64,000 nt of DNA, taken from assembly GCA_053919585.1 (NCBI GenBank), contig CM132807.1; one strand, given 5' to 3'. A program made the translations under genes and the position numbers. This document shows, piece by piece, positions 6,528 to 30,344 of this stretch. Below the pieces are notes generated by a model. That model was not told the DNA's origin. It worked only from the letters and a program-made list of their open reading frames with translations, and ran no database searches. Positions within the stretch are counted from its first letter, which is position 1; each line of letters begins with the position of its first letter. Source of the stretch: Euprymna scolopes. Lineage: Eukaryota.

Positions 6528-6970
6528 TGTGGAAAAAACTAGAAGTTACTGGTTGCTCAGGAGAGACGGGAGTAGGTGCACTTACCTTGTTACTAACCAA
6601 AAGAGTTGTTGTTTCCTAGAAGCGTTACACAGCTTTACCTTGGTCATGTGATGGTGATCACATGACCTTTTCAGACTTATAAAGGGAGGTAATAAAACTC
6701 TAGGGGGAGGTTACAATTTCAGTTGTATTTACAAATTTGCTGCTGAAGGTTACAATTTCAGTTGTATTTACCAATTTATTGCTGATGGTTACAATTTCAG
6801 TGGTGTTTACTTTTGCTGATGATGCTGATGATTACATTGCTTTACTTATTTTGTAAACTGACTGTCACGTCGCGGAAGAGGCACTTCTTTCGCAACTCTA
6901 AAGGTGAGTGGATCTTGCTTCCTTCTCGACTGAGCAGTCTTATTACTTCTAGGAAATTAAATTTTCCACA
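6528..6970 (+). repeat. 5' LTR of BEL/Pao family A
   Basis: Direct repeat of 12428-12868 (about 15 substitutions and 2 indels by eye, about 96%). It has a 9-bp terminal inverted repeat, TGTGGAAAA/TTTTCCACA. Confidence 0.97.
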
Positions 6971-6972
6971 TA

Positions 6973-6983
6973 TTGCGAAAGAA
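6973..6983 (+). promoter_or_regulatory. Non-tRNA primer-binding site TTGCGAAAGAA, complementary to LTR 6885-6895 (putative self-priming)
   Basis: Occupies the PBS position 2 nt after the LTR end and does not start with TGG. It is the exact reverse complement of TTCTTTCGCAA at 6885-6895, which is also present in the 3' LTR. Confidence 0.8.
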
Positions 6984-6997
6984 ACCCTAATACTAAC

Positions 6998-27300: not shown

Positions 27301-29914
27301 ATCCTGTCCAAGATTCTATAAGAGTATCCCCCCCATCATGCGACTTGGAGGCATCAACTAAGAGGAAAATATTATCGGAGACCTCAAAGGTATTTGCTCC
27401 TTTGCCTCTGTATCTACCTGTGACAGTGCGAGGTCGTTTATTGATGAGATAAATATGGAGACAAAAACTGAATTGAGATGATATAGTTCCTCAAGATATG
27501 ATTTCAGTTTGGAGAACGTTGGCAAAAGATTTATCAGCGTTAGAATCTGTATCTTTCCCCAGGAGGGTTATAGATGAAGGAAAGGATACAACATTATTCT
27601 TTTTCTGTGATGCGTCTAAAGCCGCATATGGGTTTGCGGTATATGCCGTACAGGATGGAAATTCATTCTTGGTATTTGCCAAAGCGAAAATGGCTCCTTT
27701 GCAGGGAAAATCCCTCCCAACGTTGGAACTTCTAGCAGTATTTCTAGCACTGAAATGCTTCCCTTTTATAAAAGAGTCCCTAAAGGACATTCCTATAAAA
27801 GGCGTCTATGTAATCACAGATGCTCAGGTAGTGCTGTCTTGGATTTTGGCTGACTTCGTCAAAACGAAAAATGTATTTGTACGGAATAGATTGCAGGACA
27901 TAGGTCAAATGTCTGAGAAAGTTAAATCTGATTTTAACATAAAGATAAACTTTCAGTACACTTCAACAGATGACAACCCGGCCGAGTACATAACCAGAGG
28001 TTTGACTATCAAGAAATTTAAGGAAAAAGTTTTTTCTTTGTTATGAGGGACCGAAATGGATAAGGCAAGAAGAATCCTCCTAGTGCCATCGTGAGTAGGG
28101 TTGCCTTTCTAAAGTTCTAATGGAGCGGATTAGCGCTTCAGTAAATTATGCCGCAGAGAATGAAGTGGCTACATCAGAAGTCAAATTGGAAAAATTCTTC
28201 AGTTCAGGAAAGTTGATCAGTGTAACTTCATTGATATTCAAGTTCATCAACAAGTTAAAAAAGAGGGTGATTGATCCTGAGTTACAAGCAAATGCCTACC
28301 TGATCAAGACAATGCAAAAACAATCCTTTTCAAGGGAGTTGGGTTTTTTGTTGGACCCTGGAGGAAATTGCATGCCTAAACTGGTGAAGAATTTACATCT
28401 CTTTTTGGACTACAAGGTAATTATACGATCGATGGGAAGAATAGGAAAATCGGAATATCACTCATATGTGACCCAAATCCCATTTTATTGGTAAAAGAGC
28501 ATCATCTAACAAGTTTGATTATTCAAGAATATCACCAAAGAAGCCAACACTTAGGTTTGACCACAGCATTAAATGAAATACGATTGGCAGGTTACTGGCT
28601 ATCACAAGGCAGACAGGCTGTTAAAAATGTGGTTAGTACTTGTGTGAAATGTAAACGCTATAAGGCCGTTTCTTGTGCAATACCAAATTCGACCAACTTA
28701 CCAGCCCCTCGGGTGAATTTTGTCAGGCCCTGTCTACATACCGGTGTGGATTTTACCAAACATATCTATGTTAAAGGACAAGAGAACGACTATAAAATGT
28801 ACATTCTTCTATTTACATGTATGAGTATTAGGGCTGTACATTTGTAACTGGTTCAGGATATGACTGTGAAATCATTTATTCAAGAATTCATTAGGTTTCC
28901 GAACGTGAATGGAATCCCTACACACCTCTATTCGGATAATGCTCGCACATTTAACGCTGCTGCCAGAATCATTAACCGGGGCATGATAGCCGATTAATTC
29001 AATGAAAGATTAAGCCCATATGACTTAAAACATTGCACAATTTCACTGTTTTCACCTTGGTACGGTGGTAGTTGGGAGAGGTCCATCAAGGCCATAAAAT
29101 CTTGCTTGCATAAATCATTAGGAAGAGGTAAAGTAGACTATTTTGGTCTAATAACAATTTTGTCTGATGTGCATAGGGAAGTAAATAGCCACCCCCTGAC
29201 ATATAGGAGCTCTGATGATGCTAATCTGAATGTCTTAACCTCTAACTCTTTCATGAATGCGAACGTTGGTCAGGGAATAATAAAGCGGTTGGAAAACCAG
29301 GACCAGGAAACGATCGATCCTGTTAGTCGAAGTGACTTGATTCAAACCCTGCGTTCCCGGGAAGAAAGCCTGACTTAATTTAGAAAAGTTTGGAATAAGG
29401 ACCATATGTTGAGTCTCAGAGAAAGATCAAGGAGCTTGGCTGGTTGTTCTTTTGAAGATAAAGTAAAACCAGGGGATATAGTGTTCATAAAAACCCTCTG
29501 AAAACAAGGCCTTTGTGGTTCCTAGGTGAAGTTCTGCAGCTAATCCAAGGAAGTGATGAATTGGTGCGCATGGTGAAGGTGAGGAAAGGGAATGGAGCTA
29601 TAGACACATACTCTATCAAGCATCTCTTTTCCTGGAAATCACTCAACAGCCTGGAGAACCTGACCCGATAGGCACGAGTTTACAGAATATAAGCCAGGAC
29701 CCTCAACGGAGAGAGTATTATAATTTGGATCTGTCCTAGCTGTAACAGACCTGAAGGTACCAGACCTATGATAAACTGCGTTAGATGCAATGACTGGTTT
29801 CACTTCAGCTGTGTGGGTCTAACTGAAGCACCACCAGAAGATGGACAATGGTTCAGTCCGACTTGCAACATTCAAGGTGTTGTAACTGTTAGACCCAGTT
29901 TATCAGGAGTCTAA
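24376..29914 (+). pseudogene. gag-pol: BEL/Pao gag-pol polyprotein of family B with C-terminal PHD finger (many stops and frameshifts)
   Basis: ATG at 24376 sits in the same TAACATGGAT context as family A. Successive ORF fragments 24487-29378 match gag, PR, RT, RH and IN. The PHD frame stops at 29912-29914. Confidence 0.92.
29726..29866 (+). other. PHD finger (TAF3-like) at the integrase C-terminus, family B
   Basis: Manual translation: WICPSCNRPEGTRPMINCVRCNDWFHFSCVGLTEAPPEDGQWFSPTC (C4HC3, with the 7th Cys changed to Ser, AGT). It is not in the ORF track. Confidence 0.9.
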
Positions 29915-29973
29915 ACAAACTGTTTTATTCTCTTATAGATTTTTTTTCTTTTGTGGGGAATGTGTGGGGAATG

Positions 29974-30344
29974 TGTGAGAATTTTCAATTGGTTGACTTG
30001 CCGAGGGTAGGTCGGTGGAGAAGAAAGGAGTGCTGATAGATGTGACCAACAAGGCCGGTGGTCCGTTTATCAAAAACCTGAGTGCCCATTCCTTACAAGT
30101 TAAATAGACATTTCAGTCACGCGTGAAACTCGCTGACTGAGAGTTGGAGTAGATAAAAAGGGGTGGCCGCTCTACTGTTGTTGTAGTTGTTGCTGTCTTT
30201 TAGACAAATTACACTTCGACCATCGTTACCCATTTGTTACTTTTACAAGGGAAGACTGCTTGTAAGCAACATCGACATTTCGTTGCAAGACTTAAACCGT
30301 CTTTTCTTCTCCCCCCCCTACTCGTCGGTATGCTAATTCCGCCA
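29974..30344 (+). repeat. 3' LTR of BEL/Pao family B
   Basis: Direct repeat of 23789-24162, preceded by the GGGGAATG PPT. Confidence 0.95.

What the first reader, a model, noticed from the sequence alone, without database searches (positions are those of the whole stretch)
6528..30344. A BEL/Pao lineage that appears to combine tRNA-independent self-priming with a PHD histone-reader on integrase (convergence on the Tf1/chromovirus design)
Seen in sequence: two BEL/Pao families with unrelated LTRs and clearly divergent proteins share four traits. (1) No TGG-type tRNA PBS. (2) An 11-12 nt PBS-position sequence complementary to their own LTR. (3) A U5-terminal hairpin and the same T-tract plus GGGGAATG PPT. 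(4) A TAF3-like PHD finger after the integrase tail. Established: in Ty3/Gypsy chromoviruses such as S. pombe Tf1, an 11-nt self-primer replaces tRNA and integrase ends in a chromodomain. BEL/Pao elements normally use host tRNA primers. Inference: this is an independent evolution of the same package in another superfamily, with a PHD replacing the chromodomain. I am not aware of it being described for BEL/Pao but cannot search the literature.
Basis: partly seen in the sequence, partly recalled or inferred. Interest (0 to 1): 0.93.

Follow-up and report, generated by a model that had tools for sequence, protein, structure and literature searches.

The report
BEL/Pao retrotransposons with self-primer and PHD
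Two dead copies of BEL/Pao retrotransposons lack the usual tRNA primer site, carry instead a short sequence that pairs with their own terminal repeat, and have a histone-reading PHD finger copied from the host factor TAF3 on the end of their integrase; this combination is not reported for this superfamily in the papers I could search.

Summary
All four observations are confirmed.

- **Elements:** A (6528-12868) and B (23789-30344) are decayed BEL/Pao LTR elements. Their LTRs are unrelated. The N gap (21367-21530) lies between them, in neither.
- **No tRNA-type primer site:** neither has TGG within 5 nt of the 5' LTR.
- **LTR complementarity:** starting 3 nt after the LTR, 11 nt (A) and 12 nt (B) are exact reverse complements of a site in the element's own LTR. 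Position-constrained shuffles reach this in 10-13 and 4 of 20,000 trials. Between families, 4 of 11 pairs differ and all 4 are compensated.
- **Other shared features:** a hairpin abuts each LTR end, and both have a T-tract plus GGGGAATG polypurine tract.
- **PHD finger:** both pol genes end in a PHD whose best solved relative is TAF3. Three relatives carry gag-pol, or pol alone, with the PHD in one unbroken ORF. Only these 3 of the 120 closest BEL/Pao proteins have it.

Self-priming is the best reading but remains inference. The transcript start is unknown, host tRNAs could not be compared, and the long-range stem is not the minimum-energy fold in larger contexts. Whether B is sister to A's clade is unresolved. 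I found no prior description in the held literature. This is a new variant of known kinds, of moderate to high interest.

The parts
6528..12868 (+). Element A, a complete but decayed BEL/Pao LTR retrotransposon
   Evidence: LTR pair. tblastn to gag-pol P0151 covers aa 14-1763 of 1778 at 54% identity.
6528..6970 (+). A 5' LTR (TGTGG...CCACA). Holds a 2.6-copy 39-nt tandem repeat at 6708-6810 and TATAAA at 6679.
6885..6895 (+). A LTR-side strand of the pairing (candidate self-primer), 75 nt before the LTR end. The same word is at 12783-12793 in the 3' LTR.
6952..6967 (+). A hairpin abutting the LTR end (5-bp stem, 6-nt loop holding ATTAAA)
6973..6983 (+). A primer-binding position, starting 3 nt after the LTR. 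It is the exact complement of 6885-6895.
6998..12307 (+). A gag-pol, broken (about 4 stops and about 4 frame changes): DUF1759 gag, Peptidase_A17, Integrase_H2C2, integrase tail, PHD
12122..12256 (+). A PHD finger, in the same stop-free ORF (11879-12307) as the end of the integrase C-terminal domain
12398..12427 (+). A T-tract plus GGGGAATG polypurine tract (12420-12427), abutting the 3' LTR
12428..12868 (+). A 3' LTR
23789..30344 (+). Element B, a complete but heavily decayed BEL/Pao LTR retrotransposon, flanked by ATAC at 23785-23788 and 30345-30348
   Evidence: tblastn to P0151 covers aa 39-1775 at 39% identity.
23789..24162 (+). B 5' LTR (first dinucleotide TA here, TG in the 3' copy)
24095..24106 (+). 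B LTR-side strand of the pairing, 5' LTR copy (one CpG-type mismatch). The exact copy is at 30277-30288 in the 3' LTR, 56 nt before the LTR end.
24141..24162 (+). B hairpin ending at the last base of the LTR
24165..24176 (+). B primer-binding position, starting 3 nt after the LTR. It is the exact complement of 30277-30288.
24487..29914 (+). B gag-pol, broken (about 26 stops and at least 4 frame changes): DUF1759, Peptidase_A17, Integrase_H2C2, DUF5641, PHD
29726..29866 (+). B PHD finger, in the same frame as the DUF5641 piece
29940..29973 (+). B T-tract plus GGGGAATG (29966-29973), with a tandem duplicate at 29955-29962
29974..30344 (+). B 3' LTR

Best explanation
A and B are old, dead insertions of two BEL/Pao (Belpaoviridae-type) families that share two departures from the superfamily's textbook design.

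(i) Priming. The site where a tRNA primer would bind is replaced by 11-12 nt that pair with a segment of the element's own LTR, 56-75 nt upstream. I infer that in the genomic RNA this segment folds back onto the primer-binding position. A hairpin at the U5 end lies between the two strands. I infer that the element's RNase H cuts the LTR-side strand after its shared 3' end, GCAA. The new 3'-OH would then prime minus-strand DNA synthesis, as in self-primed Tf1-type elements. Because each replication cycle would copy the primer back into the primer-binding site, the two strands would stay matched. That would explain exact pairing in both families despite 4 of 11 positions differing between them.

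(ii) Targeting. Pol ends, after the integrase C-terminal domain and a roughly 40-residue linker, in a PHD finger derived from the host TFIID subunit TAF3. The two cage tryptophans and the intervening methionine are kept. In relatives with unbroken ORFs a short basic RGRP-containing tail follows. I infer that it tethers the integrase to H3K4me3-marked nucleosomes, that is, to active promoters.

Shown: the anatomy, the statistics, the covariation, the domain identity, and the in-frame fusion in relatives. Inferred: the priming itself, the cleavage site, histone binding and the target preference.
For: - **BEL/Pao identity:** Pfam DUF1759, Peptidase_A17, Integrase_H2C2 and DUF5641. Identity to full gag-pol P0151 is 54% (A) and 39% (B).
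- **No TGG next to the LTR**.
- **Exact 11- and 12-nt complements**, both starting at +3 after the LTR with a 2-nt spacer. The words are unique in 64 kb apart from the element's own LTRs.
- **Constrained shuffles:** 10-13 and 4 of 20,000 reach the observed length; internal controls give 0/5396 and 1/5750.
- **Covariation:** 7 identical pairs, 4 compensated, 0 one-sided changes between families whose LTRs are otherwise unalignable.
- **Orientation is right for priming:** the 3' end of the LTR-side strand pairs with the U5-proximal end of the site.
- **B's single mismatch** is a CpG-type change in one LTR copy only, so it arose after insertion.
- **Local folds** show the stem plus the hairpin, z -2.8 and -4.5.
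- **Published criterion for predicted self-priming is met** (PMC6317226).
- **PHD:** Pfam. TAF3 is the best PDB sequence hit, E 1.7e-11. The best non-element hits in 1.8 billion proteins are Bromo_TP+PHD proteins, that is, TAF3 orthologues. A model of the natural fragment P0008 superposes on the TAF3 PHD bound to H3K4me3 at 0.9 A over 48 columns.
- **In-frame fusion:** P0006, P0151 and P0152 carry IN-DUF5641-PHD in one ORF. In A the integrase tail and the PHD share one stop-free ORF.
- **Precedent for targeting:** artificially fusing an H3K4me3-binding PHD to an integrase tether redirects retroviral integration to transcription start sites (PMC8149907).
Against: - The transcript start is unknown. 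TATA-like motifs (A 6679; B about 23968) predict starts 100-180 nt upstream of the complement, so it may not be the 5' end of the RNA as in Tf1. Only weak initiator-like CA motifs sit at its start.
- In 251-nt contexts the long-range stem is not in the minimum-energy or centroid fold, and z is only about -1.9.
- There are only two families, both dead.
- DNA of relatives was not examined (step left out).
- Host tRNAs, including internal or half-tRNA primers, could not be compared. The window has no tRNA gene and no tRNA set was available from a tool.
- In both window copies the seventh zinc ligand of the PHD is replaced. This looks like decay, since six other element-type tails that cover that position keep it, P0151, P0152 and P0006 among them.
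- Both insertions lie in AT-rich, repeat-rich DNA with no recognisable gene nearby. That gives no support for promoter targeting, though old surviving copies are a biased sample.
Confidence: 0.6

Rival explanations
1. The LTR-to-PBS pairing is a real, selected RNA structure but not the primer. It would act as a U5-leader-type stem that hides or presents the primer-binding position. The primer would be a host RNA that does not end in CCA at the annealed part, such as an internal tRNA segment, a half-tRNA or another small RNA.
For: - Half-tRNA primers are documented or predicted in Ty1/copia lineages (PMC6317226).
- The complement may lie well inside the transcript rather than at its 5' end (TATA-like motifs upstream).
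- Covariation proves pairing, not priming.
Against: - The two families differ at 4 of 11 positions of the site, so they would need different host primers, while their own LTRs track every change.
- The stem's 3' strand fills the primer-binding position exactly (+3 after the LTR), leaving no separate site.
- The polarity of the pairing is that of a primer.
Confidence: 0.25
2. The complementarity is chance in low-complexity, AT-rich sequence, and the elements use an unrecognised or lost tRNA site.
For: - With a free offset in a 25-nt window, mononucleotide shuffles reach 11 nt in 0.5% of trials for A.
- Both copies are old and mutated.
Against: - Position-constrained, dinucleotide-preserving shuffles reach the observed length in about 6e-4 (A) and 2e-4 (B) of trials.
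- The same offset, the same 2-nt spacer and the same GCAA/TTGC end occur in two families with unalignable LTRs.
- All 4 differences are compensated.
- The words are unique in 64 kb.
Confidence: 0.02
3. The PHD is a host exon or gene fragment that happens to lie at the 3' end of these two copies (transduction or nested host DNA) and is not part of pol.
For: - In the window, pol is broken in both elements.
- In B a stop separates the integrase tail from the PHD.
Against: - P0006, P0151 and P0152 encode integrase, DUF5641 and the PHD in one uninterrupted ORF.
- A's integrase tail and PHD share one stop-free ORF.
- B's PHD is in the same frame as its DUF5641 piece.
- The PHD lies upstream of the PPT, inside the element.
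Confidence: 0.02

Closest known systems
Tf1/Tf2 (S. pombe), Tj1 (S. japonicus) and the Tf1/sushi and Tcn1 groups of Ty3/gypsy chromoviruses
   Same: - No tRNA site; a stretch just after the 5' LTR is complementary to a segment of the element's own LTR (PMC4600332; PMC6317226).
- A stem-loop lies between the primer and its site.
- A chromatin-reader domain sits at the C-terminus of integrase.
   Different: - A different superfamily (BEL/Pao, not Ty3/gypsy).
- Whether the complement is the 5' end of the mRNA is unknown here.
- Self-priming is demonstrated experimentally for Tf1 but only inferred here.
TAR lineage (Houba, Osr-1) of plant Ty1/copia
   Same: Self-priming is predicted from LTR/PBS complementarity alone, by the same criterion (PMC6317226).
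   Different: Plant copia elements with no reader domain on integrase.
Canonical BEL/Pao elements (Belpaoviridae, genus Semotivirus)
   Same: - Gag (DUF1759), the Pao 'peptidase A17' region, H2C2 integrase and the DUF5641 tail.
- TG...CA LTRs, and a 4-bp target duplication in B.
   Different: - The ICTV profile gives an 18-nt site complementary to the 3' end of tRNA-Arg or tRNA-Gly, and tRNA priming (PMC8742986); that is absent here.
- 117 of the 120 closest relatives have no PHD.
TAF3 (TFIID subunit 3) PHD finger
   Same: - Best sequence match (E 1.7e-11) and best fold match (0.9 A, 54% identity).
- The cage Trp, Met and Trp positions are kept.
   Different: - Fused to a retroelement integrase instead of a histone-fold TFIID subunit.
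- Histone binding was not tested.
Other accessory reader domains in transposable elements: PHD in CR1 non-LTR elements, Rehavkus DNA transposons and Chlamydomonas retroelements; MBD in arthropod Copia elements
   Same: Capture of a chromatin- or DNA-mark reader by a mobile element, presumed to bias integration (PMC6673714; PMC8557442).
   Different: - A different element class and a different position in the protein.
- No report found of a PHD on a BEL/Pao integrase.

Membership tests
BEL/Pao (Belpaoviridae) | Gag and Pol with Pao-type domains in the order RT, RNase H-like, integrase | tested here: met
   DUF1759, Peptidase_A17, Integrase_H2C2 and DUF5641 in that order in A, B and the relatives. 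Identity to gag-pol P0151 is 54% and 39% along its whole length.
BEL/Pao (Belpaoviridae) | LTRs ending TG...CA, a polypurine tract and a short target duplication | tested here: met
   TSD is ATAC for B; none is recognisable for A.
BEL/Pao (Belpaoviridae) | [quoted passage not shown] | tested here: not met
   No TGG within 0-5 nt of either 5' LTR. The feature is as stated in PMC8742986. Comparison with actual host tRNAs was not possible.
Self-primed LTR retrotransposons (Tf1 type, as a mechanism) | At least 10 nt of the 5' LTR complementary to a stretch starting 0-5 nt after the LTR | tested here: met
   11 nt (A) and 12 nt (B, ancestral state kept in the 3' LTR), both starting at +3. Criterion from PMC6317226.
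Self-primed LTR retrotransposons (Tf1 type, as a mechanism) | The complement is the 5' end of the element's mRNA | not testable with these tools
   No transcript data. TATA-like motifs lie 130-200 nt upstream. Only weak initiator-like CA motifs sit at the start of the complement.
Self-primed LTR retrotransposons (Tf1 type, as a mechanism) | A stem-loop (U5-IR-like) between the primer and its site, within a folded structure | tested here: inconclusive
   Present in local folds, z -2.8 and -4.5. In 251-nt folds the hairpin persists but the long-range stem does not.
Self-primed LTR retrotransposons (Tf1 type, as a mechanism) | RNase H cleavage of the RNA duplex creates the primer | not testable with these tools
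   Biochemical feature; inferred only.
Tf1/sushi chromoviruses (as a clade) | Ty3/gypsy-type pol and an integrase chromodomain | tested here: not met
   Pol is BEL/Pao-type, and the C-terminal domain is a PHD.
H3K4me3-reading PHD fingers (TAF3 type) | Cys4-His-Cys3 zinc ligands | tested here: met
   All eight ligands are present in P0151, P0152, P0006, P0005 and P0008. In A and B the seventh is replaced, consistent with decay.
H3K4me3-reading PHD fingers (TAF3 type) | Aromatic cage residues (two Trp with a Met between; their roles are from my own knowledge of the TAF3 structures) | tested here: met
   Aligned with the TAF3 chains 2k16 and 5wxg. W79 and W102 are present in at least 90% of 26 aligned sequences. 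Fold match to the TAF3-H3K4me3 complex 5wxh.
H3K4me3-reading PHD fingers (TAF3 type) | Binds the H3K4me3 peptide | not testable with these tools
   Inference from homology.

The most novel reading that the evidence does not exclude
A clade of BEL/Pao retroelements has given up tRNA priming for self-priming from an 11-12-nt segment of its own LTR. That would make BEL/Pao the third LTR-retroelement superfamily, after Ty3/gypsy and Ty1/copia, in which self-priming is found or predicted. The same clade has also captured the TAF3 PHD finger, with a basic tail, as a C-terminal integrase module that tethers integration to H3K4me3-marked promoters. This would be a natural counterpart of engineered PHD tethers.
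Probability: 0.45. Interest if true: 0.7.

Novelty: new variant of a known kind. Interest (0 to 1): 0.58.

Why it matters
- **Priming:** BEL/Pao is the least studied LTR superfamily, and the ICTV profile describes it as tRNA-primed. A self-primed branch would show that escape from host tRNA primers arose in all three superfamilies. It would also mean that PBS-based annotation pipelines, which look for tRNA matches, miss such elements.
- **Targeting:** an integrase-PHD fusion derived from TAF3 would be a natural test case for how reader domains steer integration towards active promoters. It would parallel chromodomains (heterochromatin) and the MBD of arthropod Copia elements.
- **Testability:** both ideas can be tested with descriptive data: family surveys, transcript ends and insertion-site distributions.

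Tried and rejected
- **tRNA genes:** none in the window, so the site could not be compared with host tRNAs.
- **Rfam:** no family at gathering threshold in the 64 kb.
- **Host species:** the best protein matches to A's largest ORF are unnamed ENA entries at 52-70% identity. Named hits (bivalves, insects, crustaceans) are only about 30% identical.
- **Phylogeny:**
  - The first attempt timed out.
  - One of three single-piece trees used non-homologous pieces (distances saturated) and was discarded.
  - Pieces were never concatenated.
- **Larger-context folds:** these did not keep the long-range stem. The fold evidence is therefore downgraded, and the case rests on complementarity and covariation.
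- **Target duplication for A:** none found.
- **Other BEL/Pao copies or solo LTRs in the window:** none.
- **Papers not held:** PMC1369541 and PMC109269, the original Tf1 self-priming papers. The figure of 11 nt for Tf1 therefore rests on my own knowledge.
- **Rejected readings:** chance complementarity, and the PHD as unrelated host DNA.
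Full report
**Anatomy.** The span holds two separate LTR retrotransposons on the + strand.
- Element A runs 6528-12868, with LTRs 6528-6970 and 12428-12868. The LTRs are 96% identical and end TGTGG...CCACA.
- Element B runs 23789-30344, with LTRs 23789-24162 and 29974-30344, 95% identical. 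If its LTR is taken to start at 23789 (TA there, TG in the 3' copy), the element is flanked by a 4-bp duplication ATAC and the polypurine tract abuts the LTR.
- No target duplication is recognisable for A.
- The two LTR families cannot be aligned with each other (best blastn E 0.82).
- No other BEL/Pao copy or solo LTR is in the window.

**The assembly gap.** The N run 21367-21530 sits inside CA/TA microsatellite sequence, 8.5 kb downstream of A and 2.3 kb upstream of B. It is in neither element, and none of the four traits depends on continuity or frame across it. I did not try to fill it.

**Identity and state of the elements.**
- Pfam finds the BEL/Pao set in both elements: DUF1759 (gag), Peptidase_A17, Integrase_H2C2, DUF5641 in B, and a PHD finger at the end.
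- Against the full gag-pol protein P0151 (1778 aa), A aligns over residues 14-1763 at 54% identity and B over 39-1775 at 39%.
- A and B are 51% identical in the RNase H-like piece.
- Both gag-pol genes are broken. A has about 4 stops and about 4 frame changes. B has about 26 stops and at least 4 frame changes (counts only, from tblastn).
- With 4-5% LTR divergence these are old, dead copies.

**Primer-binding position.**
- Neither element has TGG within 5 nt of the 5' LTR. The first TGG is 27-29 nt downstream, and in A it lies inside the gag start.
- After a 2-nt spacer (TA in A, CA in B), A has 11 nt (6973-6983) that are the exact reverse complement of 6885-6895 and 12783-12793 in its LTRs.
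- B has 12 nt (24165-24176) that are the exact reverse complement of 30277-30288. The 5' LTR copy, 24095-24106, differs at one base by a CpG-type change, so that change arose after insertion.
- In the whole 64 kb these words occur only at these places. For A's exact 11-mer, 0.06 matches are expected by chance; for B's 12-mer with one mismatch allowed, 0.74 are expected.
- Dinucleotide-preserving shuffles of the LTR give a complement of the observed length starting 0-5 nt after the LTR in 10-13 of 20,000 trials for A and 4 of 20,000 for B. Using every internal position as a mock site gives 0 of 5396 and 1 of 5750.
- Anchored at the shared end (LTR side ...GCAA, site side TTGC...), 7 pairs are identical between families. 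Four differ on both sides and stay paired, and none differs on one side only.
- The polarity is that of a primer. The 3' end of the LTR-side strand pairs with the U5-proximal end of the site.
- The elements meet the operational criterion used to predict self-priming in plant elements: at least 10 nt in the 5' LTR complementary to a stretch starting 0-5 nt after it (PMC6317226).

**Folding.**
- Local folds (111 and 91 nt) give the long-range stem enclosing a hairpin that abuts the LTR end: A 6952-6967, B 24141-24162. The z-scores are -2.8 and -4.5.
- In 251-nt contexts the terminal hairpins persist, but the long-range stem is not in the minimum-energy or centroid structure, and z is about -1.9.
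- Thermodynamic prediction is therefore weak support. The case rests on exact complementarity at the right place and on covariation.

**Polypurine tract.** Both elements have a T-rich run followed by GGGGAATG directly before the 3' LTR (A 12420-12427; B 29966-29973). In B the motif is tandemly duplicated at 29955-29962.

**The PHD finger.**
- A's last ORF (11879-12307) holds the end of the integrase C-terminal domain, a linker and a PHD (Pfam E 7e-9) with no stop between them.
- B's PHD (Pfam E 2e-7) is in the same frame as its DUF5641 piece.
- The best solved relative by sequence is the TAF3 PHD (E 1.7e-11), ahead of DIDO1, PHF2, BPTF and ING.
- A HMMER search of 1.84 billion representatives returned element tails first (P0001, 68% identical) and, among longer proteins, P0006 (1283 aa). 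Pfam shows P0006 has RT, Peptidase_A17, Integrase_H2C2, DUF5641 and PHD in one ORF.
- The best non-element hits carry Bromo_TP plus PHD, the TAF3 architecture. Some have three PHDs.
- Two complete gag-pol proteins, P0151 and P0152, have the same C-terminal PHD.
- In these relatives all eight zinc ligands and the Trp/Met/Trp cage positions are present. P0151 and P0152 both end in RRGRPSLLPA, and P0006 ends in the near-identical RRGRPSLLPG. I read the RGRP core as AT-hook-like from my own knowledge.
- B retains a degraded version of this ending, which argues that the whole module is homologous in A's clade and in B.
- In A and B the seventh zinc ligand is replaced, which I take as decay.
- A model of the natural fragment P0008 has pLDDT above 90 across the finger. 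Its best match in the PDB is the TAF3 PHD bound to H3K4me3 (5wxh_C: 0.9 A over 48 columns, 54% identity). The next matches are mostly other H3K4me3 readers.

**Distribution.**
- Of the 120 best BEL/Pao relatives of P0151's integrase region, only P0151, P0152 and P0006 carry the PHD. The next relatives, about 47% identical, do not.
- Neighbour-joining trees were built on single stop-free pieces, never concatenated. They put A with P0151, P0152 and P0006 in 196/200 and 185/200 bootstraps. B joins them in 93/200 (RNase H piece) and 17/200 (integrase zinc piece).
- A's clade is therefore solid. Whether B is its sister (one acquisition) or obtained the module otherwise is open.
- The host species was not identified.

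**Literature.**
- The ICTV profile describes BEL/Pao as tRNA-primed, with an 18-nt site for tRNA-Arg or tRNA-Gly (PMC8742986).
- Self-priming is established for Tf1, proposed for Tj1 and the Tf1/sushi and Tcn1 groups, and predicted for the copia TAR lineage (PMC4600332, PMC6317226).
- No paper in the held library combines self-priming with BEL/Pao. The main BEL/Pao surveys never mention PBS, tRNA, PHD or self-priming (PMC3118150, PMC6238403, PMC8556966).
- PHD fingers are known accessory domains in CR1, Rehavkus, Chlamys and Chlamydomonas elements (PMC6673714, PMC8557442).
- An engineered ING2-PHD tether redirects HIV-1 integration towards transcription start sites (PMC8149907).
- Repbase, GyDB and subscription journals could not be searched.

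**Mechanism proposed.**
- Shown: the anatomy, the statistics, the covariation, the domain identity and the in-frame fusion.
- Inferred: the LTR segment folds back on the primer-binding position. RNase H cuts after GCAA, and the 3'-OH primes minus-strand synthesis through the 56-75 nt to the cut. Strand transfer then uses the same stretch in the 3' LTR.
- The plus-strand copy of the site would be templated by the primer, which would keep both strands matched.
- Whether the primer is the 5' end of the RNA is unknown. TATA-like motifs lie 130-200 nt upstream. The 39-nt tandem repeats in A's LTR (6708-6810) would fit a long U3 with a start near the complement, where both families have a weak initiator-like CA.
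- The PHD is inferred to tether integrase to H3K4me3 nucleosomes.

**Rivals.**
- The pairing is structural and the primer is a host RNA (0.25).
- The complementarity is chance (0.02).
- The PHD is unrelated host DNA (0.02, refuted by the relatives).

- I did not fetch the DNA that encodes the relatives: neither the contigs of P0006, P0151 and P0152, nor other copies, by look-up, pattern or accession. I also did not use the cluster look-up. This was the most informative test of the self-priming idea, and it is referred.
- I made no tRNA comparison, because no tool supplied host tRNAs.

- While choosing a stop-free reference for B's PHD, I worked out the place of one stop in my reasoning. It appears in no note, script output or report section.

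**Verdict.** This is a new variant of known kinds: self-priming in a third superfamily, and a TAF3-derived PHD on a BEL/Pao integrase. It is supported in silico only. Interest 0.58.

Noticed in passing
window 30972-32564 (+); diverged repeat of part of it at 39221-39885: An uninterrupted 530-aa ORF with a reverse-transcriptase domain (RVT_1, E 3e-37) starts about 630 nt after element B. This is a different retroelement, probably non-LTR. Two stretches of it recur 7.4 kb downstream at 84-92% identity.
   Followed up: partly
window 6708-6810 (and the matching part of 12428-12868): A's LTR carries 2.6 tandem copies of a 39-nt unit, each holding a TCAGTT initiator-like motif. It lies downstream of TATAAA (6679) and upstream of the candidate primer. 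This could be a U3 enhancer-type repeat.
   Followed up: partly
window 29955-29973: B's polypurine motif GGGGAATG plus the following TGT is tandemly duplicated just before the 3' LTR.
   Followed up: no
proteins P0004, P0007, P0011-P0018: Many proteins carry three consecutive TAF3-like PHD fingers. Some also have the TAF3 Bromo_TP domain (P0007, P0013); others are about 500 aa without it (P0004). These may be invertebrate TAF3 variants or further captured copies.
   Followed up: partly
window 49818-50081 / 55352-55615; 56102-56247 / 56403-56548; 3755-3896 / 49613-49754: Inverted repeats: 264-nt arms (80%) 5.3 kb apart, possibly termini of a DNA transposon; a 146-nt-arm foldback (90%) with a 155-nt loop; and a 142-nt pair (75%) 46 kb apart.
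   Followed up: no
window 19426-19650 and 21040-22190: Long TA and CA/TA microsatellite-like tracts surround the assembly gap. ORFs listed there are low-complexity artefacts.
   Followed up: no
window 26173-26397 (+), inside element B: A weak sub-threshold Pfam match to a chromo-domain-like family (Chromo_PTM, E 0.0016, 18.9 bits against a cut-off of 27) in one piece of B's pol. Probably chance.
   Followed up: no
C-terminus of P0005, P0006, P0008, P0151, P0152: Relatives end, right after the PHD, in a basic RRGRPS... tail with an AT-hook-like RGRP core. A TAF3 orthologue (P0124) has KRGRKP at the same place, so the captured piece may include TAF3's own tail.
   Followed up: partly
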